From assembly GCF_040938485.1 (NCBI RefSeq), contig NW_027272500.1, forward strand, positions 186,001-250,000: a DNA stretch of 64,000 nucleotides, given 5' to 3'. Within the stretch, counting starts at the first letter, position 1; the number at the start of each line of letters is the position of its first letter. The notes below the pieces were generated by a model. It ran no database searches. It saw only the letters and a program-made list of their open reading frames with translations, and was not told the DNA's origin. Shown one piece after another: positions 3,612 through 53,950 of the stretch. The position numbers and the translations under genes were made by a program. Source of the DNA: Diadema antillarum (lineage: Eukaryota).

Positions 3612-3757
3612 TTAATTTTCAGAAGACAGTGGTCGCTCTTTCCTCTTGATTATCACTATCGCACAGGTCAACAACGACAGGAAGAACACAATGACGAGCA
3701 GGACGTACGTGGTCGACAGCCGCTGAAGAACTCCTCGACGGAGACCAGCAATCGGAT
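3612..3757 (-). CDS. Copy A terminal exon: transmembrane helix and short tail
   Basis: ttacag|AT CCG; PIAGLRRGVLQRLSTTYVLLVIVFFLSLLTCAIVIIKRKERPLSSEN*; homologous exons in B and C. Confidence 0.85.
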
Positions 3758-6700
3758 CTGTAAGGCAGGAACAAATATTAAGGGAGTGCAAAAGCATTAA
3801 AAAAAATGAGTATCTGAATATAAGAACGACCCAAGTCCAAGGAAGGCCATTTGGAGTAAACTTAAAAAAAAAAAACTTCATATGAGAGAAGCGATGAGAG
3901 AGGGCGCTATAATATGTGACCGTGCACCTCAAAACGAACATAAAGTCGCACACACTGGTTTTGCGTGAGGACTGAAAACAAGTGAAATGGGTCAACCTAG
4001 CCGAACTTGACTTTTTCATATTTTCTGAAAGAGCAGGTCTTCTTTTACATTATGCTAAAATTTGGTATCGTGAAACGGGCAGGAAAGTGTGTTTTTTAGC
4101 AGTTTATCTCGAACATTTTTGATAGAATAGTGTGATTAGGTGTGTCTTCAGAATCCCTTTTTCATTTCTGAAAAACCTTTTCCACACTCTTCACTTTCAA
4201 CTCTAATGACTTTTGAAAGGATAATGCTACTGCTTTGAAAGTTGACATTAATTATGGACAGAATGTGTTAATGAGGCATGCTTAATTTCAGTTTAATCTG
4301 ATAATCCCTTCATTGTTGTTACTCCAGTGGTTTACTTCCTGTTTTTTGTCCCATTCATCGCACAGCCAGCACGGCTTGGTAAAGATTAAGCGCTTGAATA
4401 CACACTGTACTTCAAAGCCTCTTTTCTCAGCTCACACTTTTTCTGAGATTGTGCTTTCTTTCCAATATTTAGATAGGTTAGGAGAGTCCATTTGATTTGA
4501 GTTATACATCATTTTAAAGCTTAAAGTCTGCTCTTTCAGAATATGGTCTTAACTAAAAAGTCATGTCTGGCGACTTTTTGTTTGTTTTGAGGTGCACTGT
4601 CACATATGAATGTAAGAACGACCCAAGTCCTGGACTTATGTCATTCTTACATTCATATAAGATTTGACTCATTCATTTCAGACACTTCCGGGGGTAATTA
4701 GGATTTATCATTTATACACAAGATGAGTACATGCATAAGCTACAATTTCCTACGTCAAACTGAATTTGGCCAAAAATTGGACTTGGGTCGTTCTTATATT
4801 CAGGTCTTCAATATTGTTACTGTTACGGTGAAATTTCACTCTGAGTCCAGACTGTAACACCAGAGAATTAACTAACATACCAGGGGAAGTATCGTCTTCA
4901 GGAAATAAATGGATGAAGTTTCGTTAAACATTTAATTTTCCACGATGATTAACATTCAATCTACTTGTTATGTAGGGGAAAACAAAAGTTTCAATCGTCT
5001 TTAAAAGCGCGAGCTCTCTCCAATTTGATAAATTATGTTTTGATTTCTACGGGTTTAAATTTGAAAACAGAAACCAAACCGAAGGCAGGTTAAGTAGGTA
5101 ATTATGCTCCTGTTAATAAGAACAGTCTGATTGTTTTTCCTTATATTATTGATGTCCACACTGCACTAGGCATTCCAGGGCGAGTATCTGACTGATTAGC
5201 AAAAATAATTTCTTGATGAATAGGATGTGGGCAGTTGATATGTCCATCTTGGATGTATATGAATGAACCCTACCGAACTTGCATGGAAAGCCGTAGGCCG
5301 AGCCATGAACAACAGAGAGGCTATTCCAGAAAATTGCAGGAAATGGCCGACATTGTTTGTTTGTTGTTTTTTTAGATGGAAGAATGGGATGCTACGAAGT
5401 CGATTTTCCCATTTAATTGCCATGGGTGGAGATAATAATTCTCCGTTGTGTCGCCGTTGTGCCGTTACTGTTTATTGGTCAATACGAAATAGAAAGGTTT
5501 TTGTTTGCTCTGAATGTTAAAACTTGATAGCTTGTCTACTAAAACAGTAAACAGTATCATAAAGTAGCTTAAAATTCGATCTTCTCCTCTGAAATGCATA
5601 TTAAAAAGAGCGGATCCTTTCTGGGGAACCTATCATCACAAAATTTCTGGCTCAATATTTTCCATTACTTAATTGTTTTAAGAGAAACAAACTTACATTG
5701 GACATGTAACGTTCTTAACTGTTCGCTGCTAAGAAGGCTGCACTGAAGGACTCCTCCATGATCAGCCACGGTTGGATCCAAAGTCAACTCGCTTCTAACG
5801 CTGTACGTAGCTACATTGACAGTTCCTTAAAAACAATACAAATGATCAAGAATGATAATAAACTGGTCATTATTTTTAGTACTTCAAAGTTGTTGTAACT
5901 TGATGACCATCGTAGACCACCGCATCCTGTAGACACAGATCGCAATCTCATTGGCCAAGATGTTCACTGGAAAAAAAAAATCTGTAAGAATTGTTGTCTA
6001 ACAGAATCACACCAGTTTTTCAATTATAAAGGAATGTAATCATTGATACTGGATATTGATTTTGTCGTATTTCCGAAGCAGGTTTTCTTGTATAATCCAA
6101 CCTAAAAAAGACAGAATATATACATTGAAAAAAAATTCAAAGTGATTAAAGACGCAATGACAATAAGAACAGATAATACTAAAGTAAACAATGGTAAATG
6201 ACATTACTTTCCTAATGAAATAGTGGGTTGTTTTTTTTTTTTTGGTAAAGTCGGAATAATCATTCTCCTCCACATCCCCACCCAGTAACTTTCCTTTTAT
6301 GTCAACATCCTTGTGCTTTGTAGATTCATTAACATATCAGCACCATGAGTATGTTTTTCAGGTAGAATGATTGCGTTGTAACACTTTCTCTATTTTACTC
6401 AATGCTGCACTTGCTCCAGATAAGTCTGGTTCAATGATAGGCATATGCATGATATACAATACATGTAAAACAACAACAACATAAAAATATCAAACAAACA
6501 AAGAAAAACATGCACAGCTTTAAACCCATCACCTAATATTCACCTACAACACTCCCTCGCAATTACTCTTTCAAATTTCTACAAATACAAGGAGGGATAT
6601 TCTTATCTCGTCACATCTTGACCCTTTCGCTGACACACATATTTTGAAAGAACCGAAATTTAAATGTGAATGTGGACTGAGAAAAAGCAGCAATGCTGGC

Positions 6701-8141
6701 AGACCGCATCATTGAATGTTTGAAGAATATCGGATAATAAAGTGGAAAATTAGACTATACTTATTGTTTATCATGGCAAGCGTTATAATATTGAAAGGTC
6801 ATCATATCACTTTTCTGTTATCCTTGCCTCCTATGCATTATTTCTCCTATCATTCAATTCATTTAAATGCCATGTATATGTTGTAAAATACTCAAGATAA
6901 TTCAAGTTGTTCTATACGCAATTATTGTAATTTTTATACGTTATCATTTGTAAAAAAAAGTATGATTCATAATACACGTTAATTTTACATTGGATGGAAT
7001 ATACTATGTAATATTATTGAATAGGAGGTTGGACTTTAATTGCATACATAATGAGACGTATAACGTATCATAAAAGCATGTAAAACATGAAACACCCCAG
7101 CAAAATCATTCACTATGAAGACTGACATGTAAATACTAGATAATTATTTCAATTCCTCAAAGAATAACGGAAAAGAAGCAATGAACACACTTTTAAAAGG
7201 CAAGGGCTCGTCTAGTCCTATTGGATATTTTTGGAGAAGCGAAAAAAGTTTTATCCTACCTACCAGGGGCGTCACAAGCTTTTTTCAAGGTGATGGTGGG
7301 GGGGGGGGGGTTGCGTTTTGAAAGTAAATGTAACCTGCGATATTTTTTTTTTAGTTGATTTATTGGTTCCTGTATCATCATGTACGCGCACATACACTGT
7401 ACATACATACTATTTATACATACATTGCTGGTAGCAACATATAAGCATAAGTTGCTTTGGAAGTATTTGTCTACATTACCTTTACAATGTACATATATTT
7501 TTGGATGTGAAATTGTGATATCTGGTGCACACTCAATAGAGCATTATTTTAAACATCATACTAAGAGACATTATATTTTGTATTTTGAATTGTCACAGGA
7601 AGTTTACACGTACTTTACGTATGGAATCGACAATTAGCCATGGCTTTAATAGTTAAACGCCCACAGCCACACACACACACACAGCAGCACGCACACGCAC
7701 GCACACACACACACACACAAACACACACACAAACACATACTGGAGAGAGATTTAGGGGAATTTGATTTTTGAACGAACAAATACAACGAACTCTCTAAAA
7801 AAAAAAATCGAGTGAAAATTTTCACTCTTAAAGGATTGAATACAAAAAAGAGTGAATTTAGAGTGAAATTGGAGTGAATTTCGAGTGAAAAATGTTCAAT
7901 TTCACTAATTTCGGATTGACGTCAGGGATCACTCCAAAATCTTCGAGTAGTAAATACTGGCGAATAGATATGACTCATCAGTGCTGCCGGAGCCCCGGAC
8001 TGCGAATTGTTTTTCTGAGACGACCTTTTTGTCCATGTTGCAAAATATCAAGGAAAATAAAAACAAAACCCGGAATGATTATTTTTAGCGTCCGGCGTTG
8101 AGGTCGCTCGCAGACTGAGGTTGTAATAAGTACACTCAGCC

Positions 8142-8213
<72 letters not shown>

Positions 8214-11200
8214 TATGCATATTATTCTGTCTGCCTACGAATTTAACTTCCGTGGACTTGTGGAATAAACTTACTGGTTCCCTCACACCTCACTCCAGCG
8301 TCTTCATAATGACCACAGTTATGGCATCCCCAGTAAGCCCGCCGACATTGCAGCAGAGAATGTTCCGTTCCAGCACAGTTGACTGGGTCAAGCCAGATTG
8401 GTCCCGTTCCCTCTCCAAAGTGGGCGTCAGTATAATAATCTGAGGCCGATGAGTAGCCGAGCTCTCTGCAGACGACGTGCGCGTTGTTAATATCCCAACA
8501 ATCATCACAAACCGTACCCCACTGCCCGTTGCACCTTATCTCAACTCGGCCCTCTCTTCCGCTTGATCCACCAACCAGCCTCACTGTGTTTTATAAGAAA
8601 AATATTGTAGGCCTATAGAATCGACGGAGCATACACATACACAAGTCAATGTAATGTATTGTATTAGTTATGATACATTGTACTATGATATCCCCCAGTT
8701 TGAAATTCAATTACATACAATCTGCATTGAAAAACGGTCGATACATACAAAATAATAAGGCATGTGTCTGTTCAGGTATGTGTATTACAGTGATTGTATG
8801 GTCATATTATTAAACATTCGATGAATAATTGCTGGTGAAATCTTCGGACGATTTGCTGGGTTAAGTTTCTGTTCATCGTTGCTATTATTTTTTTGATAAT
8901 AATAATAATAATGATAATAATAACATCAACAACAATAAATAATAATGATAATGATAATGATAATTTTAATCATTTCTTTTTAGCAAGAATAGAGGACGAA
9001 AAACTTTAATGTTGACGCTGATGCAAGATCAAACATTTCTGTTTCATTTTGCCCTGCATGTTAAGTGTGTGTTTTGGAACGTTGTCATGATATAAATCCG
9101 CGTGTACTCACCCGCATAGCCGGGACACGTTGTTGAGTTAGTGTTACAGTGGCAATAATGTAGTGTGGTCGCTATACTCTCGAACTTGGTCTGCTTTTGT
9201 CAGTAAGTGTTGCTGGTCATCCATTCCAGAAGAAATCATCTTCTCGTAGATTTTTGAATGACGATTTCCTAAGGAATGTTGATAAAGGGGAAAAGTTGAA
9301 ATTTATAACCAACAATAATTTACTAAGAAAGAAGCAACAATGGCTAGTAGCGCCATGTTATTAACATAAAATCATGTAGAAAAGTCTTCTGTCATTTCCG
9401 TCGGTCAGGAATTCAAACCTGTCCGTGAAAAAGAAGTTCTCTTCAGAAGACCTGTTCCAATACTCTTCTCCGAAATAATTCTCATCATTACAAATGACGC
9501 ACTCTTTCTTTTGCCAAGCCTGTCGTAGTAATGCGATACAAAAATTAAATGGAATTAGATGGAATTGGCAGAATAATAAACCGGAAGAGGCGATCAATAG
9601 GACAGTTCTTTTATAAGCTTCCATCGCTAAAACTATCAATATTTGTCAGTTTTATATTCAGCGTCATATCTGCACATAGACGTCATCACAGTGTATAATT
9701 GAGCAAAGACAATTATAACGCGGTCCTCCTAAACCAAGTCGTAGAGAGGACGTTATATCATGAGGCACTTCGCTCTTTCAGCGGGTTCTATCTCGGAGTT
9801 TATGGAGTGTAAAAAAAAAAGTTACTCTAAAACCCTAAACTACACGTCTGCTGCAACGCAGGTAAGATCAATAAGTATTCCAACTCTAGAACTCTATAGA
9901 AGAAGAAAATTCTAACCTTAAAGGGTATTAAAACGCATATTTCTGTGATTACTCGTTATTGCAGGTGAAAGTTCACTTCCGCTTTCAACCTCCAATGCTT
10001 TTCCCTTTGCCGTAAGTGCGACTTGAATCTTTGATCTATGCTCATTTCGACAATGTGAACATTCCTTTCACTTACAGTAACTTACAGATATGTTATACAA
10101 AAAGCATATAATTTGCAAGATTTGGCTATATTATTTTGTAGTATTTCCAATTCTTTAACGGTCACTTTTTGCAACCTCAAGATTACAAGTCTCGGCTTGT
10201 ACAAGAATGTTTTATCTAACCTTTATAAGAAATGGGCAGAAACTGAATACCTCACAACACCAATGACGGCTATTTGATTCAATGTTTGTGTAGTCTAACA
10301 AGTTAAGGTACCGCGTCATAAACTTTTTTACATTCAAGGCATCTCATCATAGGCTAGTTTGCATTTATATATTTCTTTTAATATTTTTGGGGTCAGTCTA
10401 TAAATCACACAATGTAGAGGGTCCGTTATGAAAGCCTCATAACCTGCCTAATGTCTCTCTTGGAAGTATTTCCACCATTCCTTAAAAGAAGCAGATTTAT
10501 CATGATTCTGAAATGAGAATTGTGAAATAGGCTGCAAGGTTATGATGAGTGATTCTTTAAGTCCAGGTTGCCTTATAAACCCATCGGGGAGAGCGTTTGT
10601 GAAGATTAGAAATTGGTCCGTTTTGTTTCCCTCTCCTGATGTCGGTGAAAGTTCATATCCGATCAACCTGCGCATTGAGTTCGTCAAAAAGTATGGATTT
10701 CCTCATTGTCATTGTGGGCGTGAATGGAGAGGTGATTTTTTTGATGTATTACAGTAATTATTTCTAATCTATAAGGTATAATATTATCATGAGAGTACGG
10801 TAAGGTTTCAAAAGTTATCCTCATACTTTTTCTTGTAGAAGGGGTTATTATGTTATGTTTTTCTCATGCTCGTGTCTCCCCTATAAATAACCGAGTATTA
10901 GAGTGTCCGCTGAGAGTCTGTAAAGTTTCTTCCCTTTTACTCTTCTCGGCTGTCATATATTGAAGCTGAATCTTACACTTAATTTGAGCTAAAATGTGTC
11001 AAATCTTCGTCTCCAGCTCATGTGTATGGGTAAGAAAAGTATCTGTCCTTTTCTAGAAATCATTGATAAGTGAAATACACGCACTATTTGTGGAATAAAT
11101 GTGCGGATAATAATCGAGGGTGTCGCACTAGGTGAAAGGTTACTTCCGTCTGGGTTAGGAGATTCATTTTCTGAGGCGTTCCCTATATGCGCCTTGAATT

Positions 11201-11415
11201 TTCATATTATAATTTACATTAAAATAAAAAAGTATATTTCTGTATATGTCGAAATGTCTATATAATACAGTTGAATAAAAAAGGCAGAAACCCCCCCAGA
11301 TTATTTGACATTCGTTTCTCTAATTTGTAGAATGCATCACGTGCCTCCGTCATCCTTTCGCACTGAATGATGGACTTCAGCATTATTCAGCAGTTGAGAT
11401 ATATAAATATATACT

Positions 11416-11453
<38 letters not shown>

Positions 11454-14400
11454 GCGTGTGCGAGTGTATGTGTGTGTGTGTCTGTAACTTTATCATGCTA
11501 TAACAAGGAACACATCAATCCAACTCTTACATTTACGTCTACTTAATTCTGATGTAACATTGCACCCAGATGTGATTACACAGAAGCAAGGAGCAGAAAT
11601 TTTCATCAAAACTGAGGCCTAAAAGTCTTGATTGTCAAGCTCGTTCGAAAAGTCTGCTTTCAGGAATTGCGCCATCAAATTTGTCAAGAGGGCATCTTAT
11701 TGTTCTTAAAATGACAAATTTCAAAGACCCTTGCCTCCAAAGTCATAATTTTATCTAGCGCATTCGGGTTGTACTTCATTTTCCACAAAGATTTCGTTGG
11801 TGGTGGTGAAGCCGACTGTCATGAAGCCGTCTGTAATTTGGCCGCCATTCAAAAACCATGTTGGTACAGCCGAGTCTGAGACATTATTTCCTGTGCAAAC
11901 CGCGGTGACTTCACGGCCATCTCGGAGATTCGAGGGTATCTCGAGGTTCAACGTCATTCCAGCTGCAAAGGAAATGTAGGAAGATTGACTGATAGATCCC
12001 AATAGAATCAATCTTGATAAAATCAAAAGAAATGTCTTCTACGCCTCAACAATGCATCCGTTATTCACAGTCTCAAATATTGCACAGGGTAACAACATGA
12101 TTAGTATTAGGCTTTCCCTTGTATCATGTATGGATATATGGATACATGGAATAGATTGATGGAATCAACAATGCAATTGACGTAATAATGTGATATACAT
12201 CAAAATGTTCAAACTAAATGAAACGGTAAGATAATTATGTTCATGAGTTTGAGGACCTTAATGCCCACTGTTGAATTTCCACTGAACGTTATGATTTCAA
12301 AGTTGCAGCAGATCTTTACGCTGTGCTGATTCAGACTTTTTAATGAAACACATATCGAAACGACGAAAAGTGCACAGTGATGAAGGTGAAGAAATAAACC
12401 AAGTCTTAAATGATTTTCTCTTACCAATGAGGTGAATGTTTATGAAAAGAAGCCCGACCTGCACCAATACTCTGTTGTCAATCATTGTGAGCATATTCCT
12501 GTAGATATTAAAATCCTGGTGGATAAAATGGGGGAAAAATCAATCAATTGATCGATCGATCAATCAATCAATCAATGGTATCACGAATGGACATGAGAGA
12601 GGCGATAAAAGACCTATAAAACCCAAAGTAGTTATTTTCGATTTACAAGGTTTTACGATTAGTTGAGTAATACGCTTGATATGATAGAATAAAAATTGAT
12701 ATTTCGAAGAGAAACACAATCTGCATTTTTTGATTGATTTCCTCACACTTACTCGCGAGTATCTTTCAAAAATATGAGGAGAAGTTGAAAAATAAGTTTT
12801 GAAATTCGCCAATCTCCAGAAATAAACTGTTCTGCCTCGTTTACCATGAAGCTAGTATCAAATCAGGGTCGGTACCATGCGTGCATTTAAAATGTCTGGC
12901 TTTTATTGAGTCACTAGTACGATACGTGCATATGAAAGAGGCATCTCACATGACAGAATCCACAAGATTAGTCCGCGTATTGTGATGTGTCATTCAGTTT
13001 CCTGCTTCCCAAGCAGCCACGATTTTGTCTTTTGTTTTTGATGACGCCTCGTTCTTACATTTTACCCAAGATGAATGTTAATTTCATGATCTCTTCATTT
13101 TACAATTGAATGGTGAAATCTTTTTGATTTAGATTTCAAGTCCTTGTCTGCATCACGATGCGATTATATGTCGAATTTTTACTATGAGGCATTACATGGA
13201 ACATTTTGAGTATTTCAATATATCATTGCTTTTGGCAAATTCGAACAATTCCTTTGCATTGAATGGAATGAAGTTTGTTTTCTGCATGTAGTTCGGAAAA
13301 AAAGTCATGCCATTTGTTTGTTTGTTTGTTTGTTTGTTTGTTTTCTGCGTAATCGGCGTTTCAAGTGTTTTGGTTGTTGTAACTGCAAATTGAAAAGTAT
13401 AGGGTTGAAAAACACCGATCAATGTTTCCACTAAAATGAGATGTGGGGACAGAAACGTGAAAATGTATCTATATCATATATATGTGACCGTGCATCACAA
13501 AATGAACAAAAAGTCGCACGCACTGATTTTGTGTGAGGACTAAAAATAGGTGAACAGGGTCAATTTGGTCAATTTTGACTTTTTTTATATTTTCCTGAAA
13601 GAGCAAGTCTTCTTCTACATTATGCTAAAATTTGGTATCATGAAATGGACAGGAAAGTGTGTCTTTGGGTAGTTTATCTCGAACTCTTTTTCTCTCGCCA
13701 TGTTTTTTGTTAGTCATATTAATATCACAGAAACATTCAAGTTATGCTGAGGCGAGAGGAAGGTGCATTCAAATATCTTTTGTTAAACATTTCAGTACTT
13801 TAGCAATGATTGACAGATGAGGTCATCTGAAGAATATTGGTTTGATTTTTTTTTTTTTGTGTGTGGGCGTTCCCAAGTAATCTGAAGAAAAATTGGGGAA
13901 AAAATCGTTAAGAATATGGAATGTTTCTTGATATTCATTTCACCGCTAAAGTGATGTTGAGGGTATCATAAATCAATTCAAATCAACACGCATTTGGATT
14001 TCAGGGCCCCTTTAAGGACATTTCAAATCGATGATATCCTTTGATAAGAATAGGGCCTATGTTTATCTATAAAGAAATGCTTTTTTTAACACGAGCCGTT
14101 TTATTTAGTTCAGTATGGCAGATGAAAGAAAAGTAATAGAGAAAATGACATAAACGAATTCGATTCAAATGTGGTTTAGTAGGGTAATGTCAAAGGGACA
14201 TTAATGCCTTCATTGTGAAAATGGACGAGATTTGTCATGGTGGGAAACCAGACACTGCCTGTCAGTCATAGATCATGTAGCTTCTTAAATCCTACACTAT
14301 TTCTTCCTGTCTATTGACATGATGCTTTATCGTTGTTCCGTCTCATGTATCACTGCTCTTGTTTTCACTGCTCGTCATATTACCGGTTTTTGTTGACTTT

Positions 14401-19338: not shown

Positions 19339-19475
19339 TCAAGAGAGACTTATCTCTCTCCTCTTCACGATCACTGTCGCACAGGTCAACAACGACAGGA
19401 AGAACACGGCGACAAGCAGGGCGTACGTGGTCGACGGCTGCTGAAGAACTCCTCGACGAAGACCAGCAATTGGAC
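19339..19475 (-). CDS. Copy B TM/tail exon
   Basis: ttacag|GT CCA; PIAGLRRGVLQQPSTTYALLVAVFFLSLLTCATVIVKRREISLS*. Confidence 0.85.
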
Positions 19476-22400
19476 CTGTAAGACATGACCAGATATTAAG
19501 GGAGTAAAAACTTATTTCGACATAACAGAAAAAGAATCACAAAGATGTTATGGTGAAATTTCACTCCGAGTCCAGACAGTAAGACCCCAGATTTCTCGTC
19601 AACAACTGGTCGTATCATCTACAGGATGTAATAATGTTTGACACCGTCTTTGAGTGTTTCTTAGAAGTAAAATTTTAACTGATAAACAAACACAGAGATT
19701 CCTGGTTTCGAGTGACTTTTACTATTAGAACATGTCTTACAAAATCTAGGCAAATTGGTTTAATAGATTTAGAGTTATGAATACACGGTGACTCCTTGTT
19801 CGATGTAAAAATATATTTATCTCTTCGCTTATGGCTGATCATATTAATTTTGTTACTCATTAATTTTGTTACTCATTATTACTAGTATTTTGTAATTTAA
19901 GTTTTTCAATAATTACAGATACGTTCTGCTTATGCATTGTATATAGTTTTCTTTGTTTATTTGATGGTAACGAAAATAAATTTAATCTTTGAACGTCAAC
20001 TTGAACATTGAGTCATCATCAGAGTACCTCGCACTGACTTTAATACCTTTCTCGAAGCCAAAAGTTGGACAGTGTTCAACACTGGTGAAGGTCCAGCCAA
20101 TCCCGTTCGTCCCAGAGCACGTGACATTGATGCACCTGTTGCCAGGGCGTGGTCTGAAGAGAGCCGAGGCGCAGCTGGACGAGGAAAGCGTGGTGTTGTC
20201 GACTCCGATGGTGTAAGTGTGGAGGTGTGGGAACGGCTGGTCTTGAAGCCTGACGTGACACGTGATAACGAGAATGACCTGGCTTCCTTCGATCTCCTGG
20301 GTCTCGATGGAGAGGATGTTACTTGCGGGGGGTGCGTGACCTATGAGAGCAAAGAACAACATAATTGATTTGTCTTCATCCTAAAGCAAAGCAACATTAA
20401 TCACAACAAGCCTCTCTTCGACAAATTGTGTCAAAACATAACATCAATCATGTAATTTGAATCTAACTTTAAAGCAGATATCGATTCAAACATTTCATTC
20501 AATTTTCGCTCTTTCCTTTTCCTATAATCTCCACAAAAAACGGACTATGTTACAGAGCACAAAACATATAAAGCATATACATACATTAATACAAAGACTT
20601 TCAGACATTCAAGATATGCTGTTACCATTTCCTATAATATAACCAACACCCATACCAAGCCTACACCTGTTCTCAGTGGCAGTGTCACATTCTTTATAAT
20701 CAGAACCCACAAGAAACTTACCTGTTCTCAGTGGACAATAATTCCGCGTAGAAATCGTCTCCCCGAATTGATTGATACCGGTGCAAGATATATCGATACA
20801 TCGATTGGGTTGATCTTCCATGATCGTTGAAGAGGAGTTGGATCTTGACAAAATGTCTCCATCAGCGGTGATTTCGAACACACCGATCGGTGGAAACGGT
20901 TGATTGATCGGATCCACGTGACACGAGATATTGAGACTCGTTCCCCAGTTATCCTCGTCTTCTTCTACCTTGATAGAGATGATATCAAGTGCAGGTGGGT
21001 CTGAGGAATAGAGAAAGATGTGGTCGAAGATGAATTGATTTTATCAAAAAAGAAATTCACAATCAAAGTTTTACAAGTACACAATAGATTGTTTGTTAAT
21101 TAAATTTATATTTGTATATAATTATTCGAAGCTCAGCCCTAACTTCTGGTCAGTGTTGGTCTGTTCGGGCCAATAGAATGCTTAAATCTATGATTTGTTG
21201 GCTCCTGAAATATAATAATTTGTTCAAAATAAAAGCAAACGTAATGTGAATCTGAGTTGCCCGATTGAATAATTTAATCATGTTAATGTAGGTGTATAAT
21301 ATACATTTATATTTGCATATAATATGTATAAATACTAAAGTAATGAGTAAAATGTTTTAAGCAGAACAACGAATTCTTTGCATGACTTTCATTATAAATG
21401 GCATCCGTTTGCAATCACAAACATTATTTGCTTCTTTTTTTGCCCGATTTGTACTGACAAATGGGGAAAAGATCCCCATACCGAAAAGGAATAGAATTCG
21501 GTAAATCACAATGATTCCCCGACTCTAAATTACTACAAATCATTGAAAACATTTTCCAAAATACAGGTTAAAGCATAATTGTATGACAAGCAGACCATGG
21601 GAGAGAGACAATCTTTTTTTAATTTCCTAAGGCTCACCCCTCGGACAGTGTCTCGCCGTAGCGGAAGTAATTCCGACGCCATTAGTTGCGGAACACGTGA
21701 CATGAATACACCTGTTTGGGCGTGGTCTCAGGACGGTCGAGGTCCAGCTCGCGTTGGACAAGATGGTCCCATCAACTCCAATTGAATACAAATGGAGGTA
21801 CGGGAACGACTGGTCGCTCAAGTTCGCTCTGCACAGGATTAGCAGATTCATCTGACGGTCTTAGTCCAGAAACTCCAAAGTCTTGATCGACAAGATATCA
21901 GCAGCTGGAGGCTCGCCACTGGTTTCTATAAGTAGATAAATACATCCGTAACAATGATTGGGAGAATGGTTTTCCAGAGATCGTTAAAGGAATGACAGTT
22001 ACTACAGAAGTATGCTAGCGGTATTATTAATTTTCGCATTCGGAGCACAACAGTGACACTAATAAAAATTGTACAACTCATTATGGGAATGATACCCGTC
22101 ATCAAATAAAAGTTTCGAAGGGTATGGCATGTGGTTACCCTGCACGGTATTTTACGTACCTCGGAGACATCGGATTTCTTCAAAACTTGTAAAGATTTTG
22201 ATACTACATACTCTTAGAACGAAAATGGTTAACATCATTACCATCGTTATCACGTCTTCTTTTTTTTTTTTTGATAGTTTACGTGGACACACAGAGTTAA
22301 AGGGGATGGCTAGTAACTGATCAGTGGGAATCAGTGGGAATGCTGGAGGTTGATTGTTCCAATCCTTGTGGGATTCATTTAAGAGTACATTATGTATCTA

Positions 22401-25400
22401 TTGTTGTGTGAAAATTATTTGCTTCAGAATGGTCTCATATTCAAGTAATGTGCAGTTTTATGTTTCCAGGTTAGCGTGCTTGGTCAGTGACGGGGCATTA
22501 ATCTGCACATTACTTGAATATGAGACCGTTCTGAAGCAAATAATTTTCACATAAAGTATAGTAGATATATAATGTACTCTTAAATGAATCCCACAAGGAT
22601 TGGAACAATCATCCCTCAGCATTCCCACTGATTCCCATTGATCGGTTACTAGCCATCCCCTTTAAGTTATAATTTGTATGGCTCGAGAAATATATTTAGC
22701 GCATTATAATGTTTTAAAAAGAACAACGAAATGCTTGTTTGCATTGTTGTAAGTGTAAAAGGAACCCATTTTAAATGACAAACATTGTTTGCGTATTTGG
22801 CAAATTTGTATTGATAAATAGGGGAAAGATCACCGTACTGAAAAGGAATAAAGTTCAGTAAATCTATTCCCCTTAATCCCGACTCAACCAAACAGTTCCA
22901 GATTACTACAAATCATTGCAAACAGTGTTCAACAATACCAAAGAATGTCCCGCACGGGATTTAACAACTTGAAACATAATAAGGGGGAGGGGGAGGGGGA
23001 AGTGGAAGGTGGAGGGAAGATACATCTCTGGATTTCCTATCGCTCACCCCTCGGACAGTGCCTCGCCGAAGCGGAAGTAATTCCGATGCCATTAGTTGCG
23101 GAACATGTGACATCAATACATCTGTTTGGGCGTGGTCTCAGGACGGTCGAGGTCCAGCTTGCGTTGGACAGGATGGTCCCATCAACTCCAATTGAATACG
23201 AATGGAGGTACGGGTACGACTGGTCGCTCAGGTTCGCTCTGCACAGGATTAGTAGATTTATCTGACGGTCTTTGTCCAGAAACTCCGAAGTCTTGATCGA
23301 CAAGATATTAGCTGCTGGGGGCTCGCCACTGGTTTCTACGGGTAGATAAAGATATCCGTAACAATTATAAGGAGAATATTATTCCAGAGGTTGTTAAAGA
23401 AGTAACATTTACAACAGAAGTTTGCTGGTATTATTCTTGTTTGCATTATTACTACAGCAGTGACACTCATAAAGATTGTAAAACTCATAATGGGGATGAC
23501 ACCCGTCATTAAATGAAACGTTTCGAAGGGTGTGGCATGTGGTGACCCTGTACGGTATTTTACGTACCTCGGAGACATCGGATTTCTTCAAAACTTGTAA
23601 AGATTTTGTTATTGCATGCTTTTGAAAACTGTAAATTTATAACATCATTATCATCGCTTTCATGTCTTTTTTTTTTATTTTGACACTTTTCGTGGACTCT
23701 TAAAGTTACAGACTTTCAGTTACCGAAAAATCTATGTAGGACCACTCCAGTTTATCAAATGTAGTCTGCTAGAAGCATGAAACTCGTGGCCTCGGATTCA
23801 ATCATATGAAATGCTTTCCTCAATAAAATGTCTCTTCCTGAAACCAGTCTGATAAAAACTAATTATCTCAGTCATTTTTTTAAAGCTTTTGAGCAAGGAA
23901 TTGTGCTAAAAGTTTGTAGGTTTAATCAGTGTCCAAAGTAGAGGTTGGTCGCTGATTTTTCTTTTTTCAAAAGTACTCTTCGTAATGAGATGAATAATTG
24001 TTTTTCATTGATCCGAAGCCAACACCAAAAGAGAAGTTAAAACTTTTCAGCAGCACTTCTCCCACATCACCCAGTGCTGAGAATAAAGCGTATTCTTCTC
24101 GCCATTTTTGATCCAATTTGCTCTGGATCTAACCATGACACGGTGGTGGCAATATTGATATTCACATTAAAGATAATGACCACACCGATGATGTCAAGTT
24201 ATATCAAAATAACATAAAAACAATATTGGGCAATGCCACTTATTACCTATATTTCATTAAAAAAAGATGGCAATATCAGGAAAGCAAACTTCTATTACCC
24301 TCCAAACTCGCCATTCATCCTGAGTCATAAACTTTTTGTGTGTGTATTATTTTGGTTACCGTAATGATTACTTGTCTGTATGTACATTTTGTGACGCTTT
24401 CATGAAATCACCGTGATTTCATTTCTTTCTTTTTTATGAGATGTGGAAAATAAACTTGAAAGTTGAAAAGTGAAACAAATTATGTCCAATACTCTTCAAT
24501 CAATCTAGACACATATACCCAAACTGAAACAGACTTTGCGACAAATTGAATTTGACGAGGAAAAATTCATAAGGTAAAAGTAATAAATGTTTCTATTGCA
24601 CGTTTAAACACTGAGTCGTTTTTATGCAATATTTATTTCTCTCTCTTCAAGATGACGTCTTTCTCCCGGATCTCTTGATATCCTTTCATTCTGGATGTGA
24701 AAAAACTTTGTGCATATCGCACGAAGATCTATAATTGTACATATTCACTTACCACAGCTTCTGACACAATGAGTCCGTGTAGTGGTCGTCCTACCAATCT
24801 CGTTGATGCCAGTGCAGGAGATTTCTACGCATCCAATAGGGGGAGGGTCAAGGGTCACGGTGGGGGAGCTTGAAGATGCCCGGATGATGTCATCGATTGC
24901 AATCTCGTATGTCCTAATTGGTGGAAATGGCTGGTCACGTGGGTTGACGTGACACGTGACTTGGAGGCCATTAGTTTCTTGTCCATCTTCGTTGTCAACT
25001 ATCTTGATCGAGACGATATTGTCTGCTGGAGCGTCTGTCACGTGACCAGGGTTAAAAGCAGATTGATATCCAAATAAACCAAGATTAAAGTCCAGTTCAG
25101 GTTATGTTGCCTTTACATTTGCGTGACCTTGTATTACAAACTTCACACTGTCCCTCGGGACTGTGAACTTAATGAGTGTACCAACTTTTACATTGATGTG
25201 ACAATCCTTTCATACTAATTTTATGGAGTTTTAGATCATAATTGTGCATTTTTATACAACCTTGAAGAGACTATGCGTGCAATGCAAATGCATAGTGACT
25301 TGTGACGTTTCTTCAGATTAGTTGGATACGCCCCCCCCCAAAAAAAAAAATATATGTATATGTATAAATTTGTTTCCAGATCAAGCTTCTGCCAGTGACA

Positions 25401-28400
25401 TCTAAGTCTCGCATGTTTTCATGTTACTATAATAATTAACAAAATGTTGAAATATCCACGCCATGCTCGTCTATGGATTGGTGCATTCCAATATACATGT
25501 ATTTTTTTGTTAAATCAGGTTTACACTGCATATGACAGATACATCGTATTTCTATATTCTATTGGCCATTTGATTAGGATACTATGTATCAATACAAGTC
25601 AGCATGCATTTGCTTTATGCATTGCATAGTCCCTTAAAATTTAATGCAACTTTAATCTTTCTGGTATTCTGTATTTTCGGTATTCGTTGATCAGGAACAT
25701 TCTAAGCAGAGCATATCCCTTGCTGTACATGTTTATATCTACGATGTAGGTTATTACATATTATCATATATATTAGATGTATATTTATATTATAATGGGA
25801 TATCTTCGCAATTCCAGAGTTTTGATATTCCTAAGCACACTAATTCGGTATGCCTAGATATTCGACAAAAAGACAATGAAATAGAGTTCTTTTTTTCCAA
25901 ACATTTATGGCATTATTCCGAAGGTTCGCTAAATCCGAAAATTAAATAAGCGTCTTTATCTTATCGTCTATATCACTTCAGTCAATCTTCATTACAGCAT
26001 ATTTTTAACCCCAAGGTTCCACAATTAGGTTTTCTCAATTTACTTTGTTTTGATTATATGTAACCTTATTCTCTGTTACCAAAGAAAGTGAAATGTTTAT
26101 GTTCTTTTCGAAAATTTAAAAAAAGTTTGAATTGAATTGAAGAAGAAAAAATCTTGGCGGTTCGTAAATCCGAAGAAGAAAACAAAAGAAACAAAGAAAA
26201 GCAAACAAAAAGCCTTCTTCGAACCATCGATATTATGCACCTAATTCCCTTTTCGGATTAAAAAAACAACAACCAACAAACAAAATTTTCTCAATAATAA
26301 TCCTTACTTGATTCTTTTTTCGATTAACGAATCTTCGGAGTAACGGACCTTATTTTATTTTGAGGATAAGCGAACATCCAGATTAACAAACCTTTTGAAC
26401 AACAAACTGTAACTTGACGAATGTTACCCATCAAAGTCGCAGATATTGTGATAGGGTGAACAGTTTGATGTTTGATACCTACCGTGTGTTTAAATTTTGG
26501 GGATTTTCGAGGAGTTTCGAGGAATTTGGAATGGGAAATGTATGTGTTGTTTTTTTCGATTTTTGGTATTCTTGCATAATTGCAATGACAGATCTGGAGT
26601 TATTTTGAGATGTCTGCAATCTTGAGGCACATACGTATCATTTAAAATTCAATTAACACACCCGATAGATAGACCATTTCGTAGTTTCCGTGTGCGCATG
26701 AGCAGAAAAAATTCTTTTCATAACATTAGTCTGCTGGTGTTTAAATTCACTGAGATAAGAATACAAATGTAATGGTTATTCATGTAATCCTCGTAAATAG
26801 TGCTTGCCAGCACATCCGCCTGACATCAACAGAGTGTTTATTACAGCCTTGTATTTGCAATGATAACCGAAAAGTGAGTCAGTGTTTTAAATCAATGGAT
26901 GCTTTGTTTATTTATTGGCCTTTTTCGGTCAGTTCAGGTCATTTGAGTTCAATTTTGATTATTTCCTTTTTTTCACAATAAAATAATATACAAACATATA
27001 TATCACTGGTGCTTTCTTCAGTGGCCCCCCCAAAAAAGAGATAAATGTACATTTATTCCAAAAAAAAAATCATAAACTTACAGTAAGGATATAATGCAAT
27101 CGTTGCTAGAGCAAAGAATAGGAAATAGTTTTATGTATTCCGTGTGAAAAAAAAAAAAAACTGGAGGGACCCAATAAAAAGACAGAGCCTGTAGGAGTGT
27201 GCAATGGGCCCCTCTTAAATAAGATTTGATGCAAATATTGATTGAAAACAGTGGCATAGAAGATTTGAGAGTCCACTGAGAGACAGACGGACAAACAGTA
27301 CACACAAAACAACAGCACCAGGTCACCAGGTCAATGCTCGTTATTTCTTTGTTTGAAGATGCATTCCATAACTTGATACATTGAGATAGCATATGCAATG
27401 TGTTGCATTGATAGCGATTGAAGTGCCTATTCATCTGAGAAAAAAAAAAGATGAAAGGTAATTTCTAAAATGCGCAGAAAAGCTACACACACAATTCATG
27501 AGCAAGTGAAGGCGAAAAGTGAAGGCAAGAAATGACAGCCGGTCTCCCCCCCCCCCCTCCATTTTTGTATTACCATTCCAATAGGAGAGATATTCAGAGT
27601 TGTTCCAGTGATAAGCATATTGGAGTTCTTTATTTCGTTATTGTATTTAACTGCAAACAAGCACACGGCTTTGATTTGGTAAATTCTTTCCACATGCAAG
27701 CATAAAAAAGACAACTTGCTAAAAAGGGAAGCATACATACACAAGGATATTATTGGATATACATAATTATGCTATGCTTCTTACGTTGGACTTGTAACGT
27801 TCTGGACTGTTCACTGCTGAGAAGGTGGCACTGAAGGACGCCCCCATGGTCTGCTACCGTCGGAGTTAATGTCAGCTCGCTACGAACGTTGTACGTATCT
27901 ACTCTGGCGGTTCCTTTAACCAGAGAAAGGAACCAAGATGTCATTGATGGTTTGTTGTTTCAATAATTTAATTTGGTTGCAACTTGATCATGGCCACATA
28001 TTGATGTGAAAAATAAGGAAATAGATGAACGTAACATAAGGTAGCCTTGTTCAAGGCAGAGTCTGAGTCACGACACTTAAGTTCAAGCCCACTTCCAAAG
28101 CCGGGTCAATACGTGCATGTGTACCAGAACTTATTGAAAAGCAGAAACATCTGCAAACCGCTCACTAATTAGGCTATACCGTCGCCTCGCGGCACTACGT
28201 CTCATTGCATGAACCCAGTACTTTGTTGATGATAAGTGAAAGTTCCAAATAGCACGGTGAACATTTCATATCACTTCTTTTTCATTCATCCTGAGACCTG
28301 AAATTTCCTTTTGTTTGATGCTTTTTTAATGTCTCTGCTGTGTGTGTGTGTGTGGTTTTTTTTAATAGAGTCTTAGACAACGGAAGGTTCTGAATGATGC

Positions 28401-41251: not shown

Positions 41252-41388
41252 TCAAAAGACAGTGGCCTCTCTTCTCTTGACTATTACTGTCGCACAGGTC
41301 AACAACGACAGGAAGAACACGGCGACGAGCAGGGCGTACATGGTCGACGATTGTTGGAGAAATCCTCGACGAAGACCAGCAATTGGAC
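41252..41388 (-). CDS. Copy C TM/tail exon
   Basis: ctacag|GT CCA; PIAGLRRGFLQQSSTMYALLVAVFFLSLLTCATVIVKRREATVF*. Confidence 0.85.
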
Positions 41389-52866: not shown

Positions 52867-53950
52867 GTGTGTGTGTGTGTGTGTGTATGTTTGATTTTTT
52901 TTTTTCGTGCTATAACACGGAACAAATCCAATCCAGCTCTTGCATCACGTCTACTTAATTCTGATATACCCCTGTGCCAAGATGTGACCACACGGAAGCA
53001 AGGAGCAGAAATTCGCAACGAAAATTAAGCCTAAAAGTCTTGATTTTCACGCTCTTTCGAAAATTCTGTTCGAATAAACTACGACATCAACTTGGTCCAG
53101 ACAGCGTCTTAGAGTTCTAAAAATAACAGATTTCAAAGATCCTCGCCTAAAAAGTCATCATTCTATCTAGTGCCGCATGTAGGTTGTACTGTATTTTCCA
53201 CAAAGACGTCGCTAGTGGTGGTGAAGCCGTCTGAGATATTGACGCCATTCAAAGACCATGTCGGTACAGCCGAGCCTGAGACATCATTTCCAGTGCAAAT
53301 CGCGGTGACTTCACGGCCAGCCCGTAGAGGCGAGGGTACCTCGAGGTTCAACGTCATTCCAGCTGAAAAGGAAATGTAGGAAGATCGACTGTTAGATCTC
53401 AATAAAGTCGAACATAACAAAATGGGAAGAAATGTCTTTTATGGGAGAAATGTCTTCTGTGTTTGCTTGAACAATATATCCATCATTCACAATCACATAT
53501 ATTACACAGGAAAAAGATGATATAGCGTTTTTCCTGATATGATATAACGGATAAATGAAATTGATATTTTAGATGAATAATGCAATTGATGCGATGGTAT
53601 GATATACATCAAAATGATCAAACTAAATGAAACAGTAAGATAATTATTTTCATGAGTTTGAGGACTTTCATTCCCACTTTTGAATTTCCACTGAAAGTTT
53701 CAGCAGGTCTTTTTTTCAGGTCTTTTCATCCTGTTGATTCAGACTTTTAGGATGTACACAGAAATACGTATCAAAATGAACACAAGCGTAAAATGTTGAT
53801 GAAAAAAAAAATAAACGAAGTCTTAAAGGATTGCTTACCACCGAGGTGAATGTATATGAAAAGAAGCCCGAACAGCACCAATACTCGGTTGTCAATCATT
53901 GTGAGAAGATTCCTGTATGATTTGAAAATATTAAAATAAATACATAGATA

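What the first reader, a model, noticed from the sequence alone, without database searches (positions are those of the whole stretch)
5697..11962. SRCR module nested between the two halves of a single Ig domain
Seen in all 3 copies: Ig-a has the B-strand Cys and WxLNG but no second Ig Cys; Ig-b has SxLxLxPxxxDHGxxLQC but no first Cys or Trp; exons X and SRCR lie between them. I found no second Ig-a or Ig-b in the intervening introns. Inference: the protein has an SRCR domain grafted into the C'/D region of a C2/I-type Ig fold, so that the Ig scaffold displays the recognition module. Such domain-in-domain insertion is unusual for Ig receptors.
Basis: partly seen in the sequence, partly recalled or inferred. 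Interest (0 to 1): 0.85.

Follow-up and report, generated by a model that had tools for sequence, protein, structure and literature searches.

The report
SRCR exon inside split Ig domain
In the sea urchin Diadema antillarum, three tandem surface-receptor genes place a complete scavenger-receptor (SRCR) exon between the two exons of one immunoglobulin domain; this layout is kept across a large Diadema-only gene family, so the SRCR is probably displayed from a loop of the Ig fold, but no transcript or structure confirms it yet.

Summary
The window is Diadema antillarum DNA. It holds three tandem paralogues of about 22 kb on the minus strand. Each has the exon order signal peptide, Ig-a, X, SRCR, Ig-b, then 0-5 Ig-like exons and a transmembrane exon.

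- **Same order elsewhere.** Nine further loci from two Diadema species show the same exon order.
- **Ig-a is coding.** It is under purifying selection (median dN/dS 0.33).
- **The halves fit together.** Each Ig half alone barely matches Pfam. A RefSeq paralogue model that joins them directly gives one significant C2-set_2 match, and its AlphaFold2 model resembles Ig domains.
- **No hidden half.** I found no other Ig half in the introns.
- **Frame.** The splice phases make Ig-a|X|SRCR|Ig-b one open frame, and three RefSeq models join the exons this way.

Not shown:
- No RNA run was listed.
- Other RefSeq models skip SRCR, or skip Ig-a and X.
- The Ig-a donor (GTACAA) is weak.
- AlphaFold2 of the nested form is confident only for the SRCR.

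The nested protein is the best reading (about 0.55), and alternative splicing is the main rival. The scan noted the same layout before on another piece of this genome (s1-215024).

The parts
12425..12494 (-). Copy 1 signal-peptide exon (ATG at 12494 or 12485; ends in phase 1, donor GTAAGA)
   Evidence: It resembles the N-termini of XP_071478253.1 and XP_071500351.1.
11775..11962 (-). Copy 1 Ig-a exon: strands A to C'/D of an Ig domain, with the B-strand Cys and W-F-L-N-G. Strong acceptor, phase 1 in and phase 0 out, weak donor GTACAA.
   Evidence: Purifying selection.
11131..11148 (-). Copy 1, first of three copies of a conserved 18-nt intronic element (CGGAAGTAACCTTTCACC here). Role unknown.
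10644..10661 (-). Copy 1, second copy of the 18-nt intronic element
9964..9981 (-). Copy 1, third copy of the 18-nt intronic element (exact CGGAAGTGAACTTTCACC)
9112..9190 (-). Copy 1 exon X: 26 aa, rich in Ser/Thr and Cys, acting as a linker. Phase 0 in and phase 1 out, strong donor G|GTGAGT. It adapts the frame between Ig-a and SRCR.
8275..8583 (-). Copy 1 SRCR exon: one complete SRCR domain, phase 1 in and phase 1 out
   Evidence: The corresponding SRCR of copy 3 was the one modelled and matched to solved SRCR structures.
5697..5825 (-). Copy 1 Ig-b exon: strands E, F and G of the Ig domain with the F-strand Cys. Phase 1 in and phase 1 out, donor GTAAGT.
3612..3757 (-). Copy 1 last coding exon: stalk, transmembrane helix and 11-aa tail, ending at a stop codon. 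Joining the six exons gives one 306-aa open frame.
   Evidence: It matches the C-terminus of XP_072181432.1 of D. setosum.
34755..34815 (-). Copy 2 signal-peptide exon
33884..34056 (-). Copy 2 Ig-a exon
30151..30223 (-). Copy 2 exon X (24 aa; an in-frame 6-nt deletion relative to copies 1 and 3)
29447..29755 (-). Copy 2 SRCR exon
27785..27913 (-). Copy 2 Ig-b exon
19342..25101 (-). Copy 2 downstream part (approximate limits, taken from open frames). Four single-exon Ig-like domains lie in frames 24748-25101, 23040-23378, 20612-21040 and 19985-20380. A duplicated one at 21630-21983 carries an in-frame stop. The transmembrane exon lies in frame 19342-19536.
   Evidence: The Ig-like nature rests on a protein-language-model lead only.
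53839..53899 (-). Copy 3 signal-peptide exon
53190..53362 (-). Copy 3 Ig-a exon
   Evidence: It is part of XP_071480512.1.
50523..50601 (-). Copy 3 exon X
49520..49828 (-). Copy 3 SRCR exon
45788..45916 (-). Copy 3 Ig-b exon
41255..45064 (-). Copy 3 downstream part (approximate limits): four Ig-like exons and the transmembrane exon. The first Ig-like exon has an in-frame TAA at 44936-44938, where the RefSeq model XP_071480512.1 ends.

Best explanation
Each unit is a gene for a type I membrane protein of a Diadema-specific IgSF/SRCR receptor family.

The membrane-distal Ig domain is encoded by two exons. Ig-a encodes strands A to C'/D. Ig-b encodes strands E to G. Two further exons lie in the intron between them: a short Cys/Ser/Thr-rich linker (X) and one complete SRCR domain.

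Spliced in genomic order, the mRNA encodes signal peptide, Ig(N), X, SRCR, Ig(C), then 0 to 5 Ig-like domains, a transmembrane helix and a short tail. In the protein the two Ig halves would pack into one beta-sandwich closed by the B-F disulfide. The SRCR, tethered by X, would project from the loop between strands D and E. In V-type Ig domains that loop lies at the same end as the BC and FG loops (my own knowledge). The SRCR would then be the ligand-binding head and the Ig its pedestal.

Shown here:
- the exon order, splice phases and open frame;
- conservation of the order across the family;
- purifying selection on Ig-a, SRCR and Ig-b;
- the complementarity of the two Ig halves.

Inferred:
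- that all four exons are included in the mRNA;
- that the halves co-fold;
- that the SRCR binds ligands.
For: - **Exon structure.** Boundaries and phases come from three-way alignments. Copy 1 assembles into a 921-nt, 306-aa single open frame with GT-AG at every junction.
- **Only route for Ig-a.** Ig-a ends in phase 0. In copies 1 and 3 and in both L006 genes it has no phase-1 GT donor. Copy 2 has one only at the last codon before the stop. Ig-a can therefore stay in frame only through X.
- **Ig-a is translated.** Median pairwise dN/dS is 0.33 over 11 paralogues, and all 40 usable pairs are below 1.
- **Selection on the other exons.** SRCR dN/dS is 0.19-0.25. Ig-b is 0.18-0.59.
- **Conserved order.** Signal peptide, Ig-a, SRCR and Ig-b lie in the same order in loci L001-L009 from two species and three subfamilies. 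X was found in seven of these nine loci but not in L004 or L005.
- **Complementary halves.** The halves alone score E 0.02-0.12. Joined in XP_071479287.1, residues 1-123 score C2-set_2 at E 2.1e-7, 31.3 bits, as one stretch covering residues 14-110 and profile positions 14-80 of 89. The AlphaFold2 model of that stretch has seven strands. Every one of the top 50 Foldseek matches listed is an Ig-domain chain, with probability 0.97-1.0 and TM-score 0.41-0.54.
- **No other half-Ig** was found in the introns.
- **RefSeq models joining all four exons:** XP_071480512.1 (this window's copy 3), XP_072181432.1 (D. setosum) and XP_071478253.1, which includes the signal peptide.
- **The insert is an autonomous SRCR fold.** Z is 15.9 against SCARA1, with MARCO, DMBT1 and M2BP close behind.
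Against: - No transcript evidence. No RNA run was listed, and no transcript-derived protein of Diadema appeared in three protein searches.
- The Ig-a donor GTACAA is weak.
- RefSeq models are inconsistent. XP_071479287.1 and XP_071497861.1 join Ig-a directly to Ig-b, although an intact SRCR exon lies between them. XP_071500351.1 joins the signal peptide directly to SRCR, although intact Ig-a and X exons lie between them. Many other models start at the SRCR.
- AlphaFold2 of the nested form gives block-mean pLDDT of 22-48 for the Ig halves and pTM 0.46.
- X shows no protein-level constraint (dN/dS about 1). In the D. setosum orthologue its 5' half is read in another frame after a 4-nt deletion.
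- Copy 3 has a premature stop downstream.
Confidence: 0.55

Rival explanations
1. The exons are alternatively spliced cassettes. Since signal peptide, (Ig-a+X), SRCR and Ig-b all meet in phase 1, the gene could make a plain-Ig isoform (signal peptide, Ig-a, X, Ig-b) and/or an SRCR isoform without Ig-a (signal peptide, SRCR, Ig-b). The fully nested form would then be rare or absent.
For: - All the skipping products named are in frame.
- The Ig-a donor is weak while every other splice site is strong.
- RefSeq holds SRCR-skipping models (XP_071479287.1, XP_071497861.1) and an Ig-a/X-skipping model (XP_071500351.1), each from a locus where the skipped exons are intact.
- A strongly conserved 18-nt element sits in the intron after Ig-a in every gene and could regulate splicing.
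Against: - These models are predictions that disagree with each other, and several are plainly forced.
- An SRCR isoform without Ig-a would leave Ig-b as an orphan half-sandwich with an unpaired Cys. Yet SRCR and Ig-b are both under purifying selection and always adjacent.
- A plain-Ig-only gene would not keep the SRCR exon constrained.
- This rival does not exclude the nested form; it only makes it one of several products.
Confidence: 0.3
2. Ig-a and X together form a small self-contained domain, with the Ig-a Cys paired to a Cys in X. Ig-b would be an independent stalk segment after the SRCR, so nothing is nested.
For: - A weak C1-set alignment runs over Ig-a plus X in XP_071480512.1 (residues 14-75, profile positions 13-75 of 86, E 0.06).
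- X follows Ig-a wherever X was found and keeps two Cys.
Against: - That match is not significant, and no single stretch passes the threshold.
- X shrinks to 9-19 aa in other subfamilies.
- X has dN/dS about 1 and a frame change in D. setosum.
- Ig-a joined to Ig-b gives a far stronger single-domain match and an Ig-like model.
Confidence: 0.05
3. Ig-a is a decaying relic of an Ig domain that was destroyed when an SRCR exon landed in its intron. Only signal peptide, SRCR and Ig-b would still be expressed.
For: - The Ig-a donor is weak.
- One locus (L002) has a 1-nt deletion in Ig-a.
- Most RefSeq models omit Ig-a.
Against: - Ig-a keeps its open frame, its Cys, its Trp and the W-Y-L-N-G-V-Q-I-T motif in distant subfamilies whose introns no longer align.
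- dN/dS is below 1 in 40 of 40 pairs.
- The near-identical locus L007 lacks the deletion.
- The Ig-a acceptor is strong and conserved.
Confidence: 0.05

Closest known systems
Integrin beta subunit: the beta-I domain is inserted in the hybrid (Ig-like sandwich) domain, which is itself inserted in the PSI domain (my own knowledge, not tested here)
   Same: It is a eukaryotic cell-surface receptor in which a complete ligand-binding domain is nested in a loop of an Ig-like beta-sandwich. The sandwich is built from two sequence segments that lie far apart.
   Different: The inserted domain is a vWA-type fold, not SRCR. Its structure is solved. The family is ancient and pan-metazoan. There is no sequence relationship to the Diadema proteins.
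Gram-positive adhesins such as Cpa, where a thioester domain is inserted into an Ig-like isopeptide domain (stated in PMC6194298)
   Same: A binding module is inserted into an Ig-like stalk domain and projected away from the cell surface.
   Different: These are bacterial, sortase-anchored proteins with unrelated folds, and they have no introns.
Antibodies with whole modules in a V-domain loop: LAIR1-insert antibodies and the bovine ultralong CDR H3 knob (my own knowledge; a bovine ultralong antibody, 8p2t, appeared among the Foldseek hits only as a generic Ig match)
   Same: An Ig domain serves as the scaffold for an extra disulfide-rich or Ig module displayed from a loop.
   Different: Those inserts arise somatically or from special D segments in V domains of vertebrates. 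Here the insert is a germline exon in a C2-type domain.
Sea urchin SRCR multigene families (PMC10855680 reports 357 SRCR genes in Strongylocentrotus purpuratus, mostly in tandem clusters) and the vertebrate SRCR proteins M2BP/LGALS3BP, DMBT1, SCARA1 and MARCO
   Same: The SRCR domain here is canonical. It matches Pfam fully, is 43-53% identical to solved SRCR domains with Z about 15-16, is encoded by one phase 1-1 exon, and sits in tandemly duplicated genes.
   Different: RefSeq's names for these genes (galectin-3-binding protein B-like, DMBT1-like) rest on the SRCR alone. They have no BTB/BACK, CUB or ZP domains. They have one SRCR, Ig-like domains and a transmembrane helix, and the SRCR lies inside an Ig domain.

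Membership tests
SRCR domain (Pfam PF00530) | Full-length profile match above the gathering score | tested here: met
   E 4.4e-33, 114 bits against a cut-off of 26.1, profile positions 1-100 of 100 for window:8276-8581:-.
SRCR domain (Pfam PF00530) | SRCR fold | tested here: met
   In the AlphaFold2 model, residues about 78-188 have pLDDT of 70-84 over most of the domain. They align to SCARA1, MARCO, DMBT1, M2BP and CD163 SRCR structures with Z 13-16 and rmsd 1.7-2.4 over about 103-109 residues.
SRCR domain (Pfam PF00530) | One domain per exon, phase 1-1, as in DMBT1 and CD163 (my own knowledge of those genes) | tested here: met
   The exon is 309 nt with phase 1 at both ends in all three copies.
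Immunoglobulin superfamily, C2-type domain (Pfam PF08205 C2-set_2) | B-strand Cys followed by the C-strand Trp | tested here: met
   Ig-a has V-T-A-V-C, then T-W-x-L-N-G 14 residues later, in all copies and paralogues.
Immunoglobulin superfamily, C2-type domain (Pfam PF08205 C2-set_2) | E-F region motif ending in the F-strand Cys | tested here: met
   Ig-b has S-E-L-T-L-x-P-T-x-A-D-H-G-G-V-L-Q-C in all copies.
Immunoglobulin superfamily, C2-type domain (Pfam PF08205 C2-set_2) | Profile match above the gathering score over one domain | tested here: inconclusive
   Met for the paralogue model that joins the halves (XP_071479287.1 residues 1-123: 31.3 bits against a cut-off of 21, one stretch). 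Not met for the window's own interrupted domain (17.7 bits for Ig-b in XP_071480512.1; halves alone 13-15 bits).
Immunoglobulin superfamily, C2-type domain (Pfam PF08205 C2-set_2) | Ig beta-sandwich fold formed by both halves | tested here: inconclusive
   The joined paralogue model has pLDDT 60, and all top 50 Foldseek hits listed are Ig-domain chains (TM-score 0.41-0.54). In the nested form the Ig halves have pLDDT of only 22-48.
Nested (inserted) domain architecture | The insert is a complete autonomous domain | tested here: met
   The SRCR is complete by profile and by fold.
Nested (inserted) domain architecture | Both parent segments and the insert lie in one polypeptide | not testable with these tools
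   The open frame and three RefSeq predictions support it. No RNA run could be listed, and other predictions skip exons.
Nested (inserted) domain architecture | The parent segments co-fold around the insert | tested here: inconclusive
   The AlphaFold2 model places strands at the expected positions in both halves, but with low confidence.
Nested (inserted) domain architecture | The arrangement is conserved among homologues | tested here: met
   Twelve loci in two species and three subfamilies keep the order signal peptide, Ig-a, SRCR, Ig-b, with X found in ten of them.
Galectin-3-binding protein (LGALS3BP/M2BP), the name RefSeq gives copy 3 | An SRCR followed by BTB/BACK-type domains, in a secreted protein (my own knowledge) | tested here: not met
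   Pfam finds only SRCR and weak Ig matches. The family has a transmembrane exon.
DMBT1-like, the name RefSeq gives the D. setosum orthologue of copy 1 | Tandem SRCR arrays with CUB and ZP domains (my own knowledge) | tested here: not met
   One SRCR, no CUB or ZP.

The most novel reading that the evidence does not exclude
A Diadema-specific expanded receptor family uses a germline domain-in-domain design. An SRCR head is displayed from the D-E loop of a C2-type Ig pedestal. Regulated splicing switches one gene between a plain-Ig receptor and an SRCR-bearing receptor. The weak Ig-a donor and the ultra-conserved 18-nt intronic element would control that switch.
Probability: 0.2. Interest if true: 0.8.

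Novelty: new variant of a known kind. Interest (0 to 1): 0.6.

Why it matters
Domain insertions are known, but I know of no described SRCR domain nested in an Ig domain. My literature check was limited: two text searches returned none.

If the nested protein is real, it is a clean natural example of exon shuffling into an intron that lies inside a domain. It would yield a folded domain-in-domain receptor that then expanded into dozens of genes in one sea urchin lineage.

This bears on two questions:
- how invertebrate innate-immune receptor repertoires diversify;
- how tolerant the Ig fold is to large loop insertions, which matters for protein engineering.

It also flags a practical problem. 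The RefSeq models of this family are inconsistent and misnamed. Diadema antillarum has suffered mass mortalities, so its immune gene catalogue is of applied interest.

Tried and rejected
1. **Exhaustive protein search with the SRCR exon.** Ranking by summed score filled the list with multi-SRCR proteins.
3. **AlphaFold2 of the nested form.** Only the SRCR was confident, and a second look with VIA-align returned only SRCR chains. Model coordinates are not exposed, so the Cys-Cys distance could not be measured.
4. **First alignment for the joined Ig.** MAFFT dragged the Ig-a fragments onto the Ig-b columns. I discarded it and rebuilt it with full-length anchor rows.
5. **Early candidates for exon X.** I first looked at the conserved blocks at 11113-11150 and about 9976. 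They lack consistent splice sites and the right phase, and turned out to be copies of an 18-nt intronic element. A microexon reading of that element was considered and dropped because the acceptor is not conserved.
6. **Exon X in subfamilies L004 and L005.** It was not found through its donor motif. How Ig-a stays in frame there is unresolved.
7. **The 1-nt deletion in Ig-a of L002.** It first looked like evidence that Ig-a is dispensable, but the near-identical locus L007 is intact.
8. **Cysteine parity of the ectodomain.** It does not discriminate between the isoforms.
9. **Typed spliced proteins.** The tests used database models instead.

Full report
**What is in the window.** The window is AT-rich animal DNA (GC about 0.36). 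A self-comparison shows three tandem units of about 22 kb whose introns still align at about 70-75% identity. The SRCR exon of the third unit is 100% identical to RefSeq protein XP_071480512.1 of the sea urchin Diadema antillarum. That protein lies on a 360-kb contig of assembly GCA_040938485.1, which NCBI's pipeline annotated (bioRxiv 10.64898/2026.05.24.727502). All genes discussed here lie on the minus strand.

**Checking the observation.** Motif scans and three-way alignments give exact exon limits:
- Ig-a: 11962-11775, 34056-33884, 53362-53190.
- X: 9190-9112, 30223-30151, 50601-50523.
- SRCR: 8583-8275, 29755-29447, 49828-49520.
- Ig-b: 5825-5697, 27913-27785, 45916-45788.

The finding's coordinates are the outer limits of copy 1. 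Ig-a has a single Cys followed by T-W-x-L-N-G. Ig-b has S-E-L-x-L-x-P-T-V-A-D-H-G-G-V-L-Q-C and no Trp.

Pfam matches Ig-a only to the N-terminal part of an Ig profile (Ig_2 positions 8-51 of 79, E 0.12). It matches Ig-b only to the C-terminal part (C2-set_2 positions 55-82 of 89, E 0.02). It matches the SRCR exon to the whole SRCR profile (E 4e-33).

I scanned all 45 minus-strand open frames of at least 36 aa between Ig-b and Ig-a of copy 1 against Pfam. One Ig-family match appeared, C2-set_2, which I attribute to the Ig-b control because the summary table does not name the member. tblastn with family proteins found no extra Ig-a or Ig-b. The test for a hidden, unrelated half-Ig is weak, because half-domains score poorly; the Ig-a control itself gave no Ig-family match in that scan.

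**The whole gene.** Upstream of each Ig-a lies a 61-70-nt exon encoding a hydrophobic N-terminus (M-I-D-N-R-V-L-V-Q-V-G-L-L-F-I-N-I-H-L-I). It ends in phase 1 at a strong donor.

The splice phases are:
- Ig-a starts in phase 1 at a strong acceptor and ends in phase 0 at an invariant but weak donor, GTACAA.
- X runs from phase 0 to phase 1, with a strong GTGAGT donor.
- SRCR and Ig-b are both phase 1 to phase 1.

In copy 1 the next coding exon (3757-3612) encodes a stalk, a transmembrane helix and an 11-residue tail. Joining the six exons gives one 921-nt open frame of 306 codons with GT-AG at every junction. Copies 2 and 3 carry four or five further single-exon domains of about 100 aa between Ig-b and the transmembrane exon. 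A protein-language-model search places these among Ig domains (score 0.88-0.90, a lead only), but Pfam does not recognise them.

**Relatives.** The protein searches returned 43 relatives, all from D. antillarum and D. setosum. That search depends on shared 5-residue words, so distant relatives elsewhere are not excluded.

I fetched nine loci. Every gene keeps signal peptide, Ig-a, SRCR and Ig-b in the same order. This includes subfamilies L004 and L005, whose proteins are only about 46-50% identical to the query paralogue XP_071479287.1 and whose introns no longer align. X was found in seven of the nine loci, not in L004 or L005. The D. setosum locus L006 holds the orthologue of copy 1, with the same short architecture (XP_072181432.1).

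**Is Ig-a really coding?** Across 11 paralogues the median pairwise dN/dS of Ig-a is 0.33. All 40 pairs with usable dS are below 1, including pairs at saturated dS. The motif W-Y-L-N-G-V-Q-I-T is nearly invariant. SRCR has dN/dS 0.19-0.25 and Ig-b 0.18-0.59.

X shows no constraint (about 0.5 to above 1). In D. setosum a 4-nt deletion forces its 5' half into another frame. Only its 3' end (T-C-P-G-Y/F-A in most loci) and its donor are conserved across subfamilies. X therefore behaves as a flexible linker that also adapts the reading frame.

A 1-nt deletion in Ig-a of locus L002 is absent from the near-identical locus L007. It is an allele or an assembly error, not a family trait. The idea that Ig-a is a dead relic is therefore rejected.

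**Are the two halves one Ig domain?** RefSeq model XP_071479287.1 (locus L001) joins Ig-a directly to Ig-b, skipping an intact SRCR exon that lies between them.
- Its residues 1-123 match C2-set_2 at E 2.1e-7 and 31.3 bits (cut-off 21). The match is a single stretch from residue 14 to 110, covering profile positions 14-80 of 89.
- The near-identical XP_071497861.1, which carries a signal peptide, behaves the same way.
- Each half alone reaches only 13-15 bits.
- The AlphaFold2 model of this stretch has mean pLDDT 60, with strands at 2-6, 17-25, 32-36, 46-53, 87-95, 105-110 and 118-122.
- It has a low-confidence stretch at 58-82, which contains the Ig-a/Ig-b junction where the insert would sit.
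- All of the top 50 Foldseek matches listed are Ig-domain chains (MHC class II, beta-2-microglobulin, antibody light chains, T-cell receptor chains). They have probability 0.97-1.0 and TM-score 0.41-0.54 over about 124-143 alignment columns.

It was run on a paralogue whose Ig-a is 72-82% identical to the window's.

**Is the SRCR really nested in the protein?** The arguments for:
- Ig-a is translated and ends in phase 0. Copies 1 and 3 and both genes of L006 have no phase-1 GT donor in Ig-a. Copy 2 has one only at the last codon before the stop. Ig-a can therefore continue only into X.
- X ends in phase 1 and can join either SRCR or Ig-b.
- SRCR is under purifying selection, so it is translated in some product.
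- An SRCR product without Ig-a would carry Ig-b as an orphan half-sandwich with an unpaired Cys.
- The product that uses every constrained exon sensibly is therefore Ig-a, X, SRCR, Ig-b.
- Three RefSeq models have exactly this order: XP_071480512.1 (copy 3), XP_072181432.1, and XP_071478253.1, which includes the signal peptide.

The arguments against:
- No RNA run could be listed, and no transcript-derived Diadema protein appeared in any search.
- RefSeq's models disagree with one another. Some skip X and SRCR. One joins the signal peptide straight to SRCR over intact Ig-a and X exons (XP_071500351.1, locus L009). Some are plainly forced.
- The AlphaFold2 model of the nested form (XP_071480512.1 residues 1-229, 37-row alignment) is confident only for the SRCR (pLDDT 70-84, Z 15.9 to solved SRCR domains). 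The Ig halves have block-mean pLDDT of 22-48.
- In that model strands are placed where an Ig domain needs them (2-6, 17-22, 33-36, 39-41; then 198-201, 211-216, 221-226). I could not inspect the coordinates, so co-folding remains unproven.

**Mechanism proposed.** An ancestral IgSF receptor had its distal Ig domain split by an intron. A phase 1-1 SRCR exon entered that intron. SRCR exons are very abundant in sea urchins: PMC10855680 reports 357 SRCR genes in S. purpuratus, mostly in tandem clusters. The linker exon X either came with it or was recruited.

The result is a type I membrane protein in which the SRCR hangs from the D-E loop of the Ig sandwich. The 24-26-residue X is long enough to bridge whatever distance separates the SRCR termini; that is my inference. 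The SRCR would bind ligand and the Ig and Ig-like domains would form the stalk. I give this 0.55.

The main rival, at 0.3, is that the exons act as alternative cassettes and the nested form is minor or absent. The two readings can coexist.

**Comparison with known systems.** Nested domains inside Ig-like sandwiches are known. One case is the integrin beta-I domain in the hybrid domain (my own knowledge). Another is the thioester domain inserted into an Ig-like isopeptide domain in Cpa (PMC6194298). A third is whole modules in antibody V-domain loops (my own knowledge).

The SRCR itself is canonical. RefSeq's names for these genes (galectin-3-binding protein B-like, DMBT1-like) reflect only the SRCR. 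The defining BTB/BACK, CUB and ZP domains are absent. I found no description of an SRCR nested in an Ig domain, but only two limited text searches were run.

**Earlier notes of this scan.** A note on this window (s1-208913) pointed to the weak Ig-a donor and to the conserved read-through ending V-Q-P-x-C followed by a stop. I confirmed both. The read-through is not conserved in subfamilies L001, L004 and L005, so a short secreted Ig-a product is unlikely to be the point of this exon. Another note (s1-215024) reports the same layout on a different piece of this genome, with a similar verdict. It agrees with this report but is not independent evidence.

**Verdict.** The two-halves-of-one-Ig reading is well supported. 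The nested protein is the most economical reading but lacks transcript and structural proof. I rate it a new variant of a known kind, with interest 0.6.

Noticed in passing
window 11131-11148, 10644-10661, 9964-9981 (copy 1); 33217, 31701, 31024 (copy 2); 52560, 52074, 51401 (copy 3) (each the first, highest base on the minus strand); also loci L001-L006: An 18-nt element, CGGAAGTGAACTTTCACC, lies on the gene strand in the intron after Ig-a of every family gene examined, in one to three copies. It is 18/18 identical in subfamily L005 and 17/18 in L004, where the flanking intron no longer aligns, so it is better conserved than the exons. It starts with an ETS-like core (CGGAAGTG; my own knowledge) and contains the palindrome GTGAA-CT-TTCAC. 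It could be an intronic enhancer or a splicing regulator. It is not a convincing microexon.
   Followed up: partly
window 44936-44938 (minus strand): Copy 3 has an in-frame TAA in its first Ig-like exon (D-Q-P-F-P has become D-stop-P-F-P). The RefSeq model XP_071480512.1 ends there at 262 aa without a transmembrane segment. Copy 3 may be a pseudogene or encode a truncated secreted form.
   Followed up: partly
window 21348-22302 and 22705-23711: There is an internal tandem duplication in copy 2 (78% identity) that duplicates one Ig-like exon. The copy at 21630-21983 carries an in-frame stop (F-L-D-stop-D-R-Q).
   Followed up: partly
window 2547-3249 and 3906-4607 (inverted, 81%); similar copies at 42399-43103, 18083-18760, 13461-13690: A repeat of about 700 nt is present several times in both orientations and is probably a transposable element. 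In copy 1 an inverted pair of it lies on either side of the transmembrane exon, and copy 1 lacks the Ig-like exons that copies 2 and 3 carry.
   Followed up: no
L006:12767-12844 (D. setosum) against window 9112-9190: The D. setosum orthologue of copy 1 has a 4-nt deletion inside exon X. Its RefSeq model keeps the frame by using an acceptor 4 nt further upstream, so the first half of X is read in a different frame in the two species.
   Followed up: partly
L002:4158-4310 against L007:4136-4315: A 1-nt deletion (GGC to GC) breaks the Ig-a frame in L002 but not in the near-identical locus L007. This is probably a haplotype difference or an assembly error.
   Followed up: yes
window 54378-61282: Copy 3 has about 7 kb of extra sequence upstream of its signal-peptide exon compared with copies 1 and 2. 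It includes a tandem repeat at 57910-58455 / 58451-59013 (88% identity).
   Followed up: no
window 40443-40669 and 40674-40900: A 227-nt direct tandem duplication at 99.6% identity lies downstream of the copy 3 transmembrane exon.
   Followed up: no
window 15668-15803: This is a run of 136 N between unit 1 and unit 2. I left it as it is.
   Followed up: no
L001:10150-10192, L008:6655-6694, L002 and L007: In the L001-type subfamily the Ig-a exon reads on for 13 more conserved residues (I-S-R-S-D-D-W-C-T-F-S-D-Y) to a phase-1 donor. In that subfamily Ig-a could therefore join SRCR or Ig-b directly. The window's subfamily lacks this option.
   Followed up: partly
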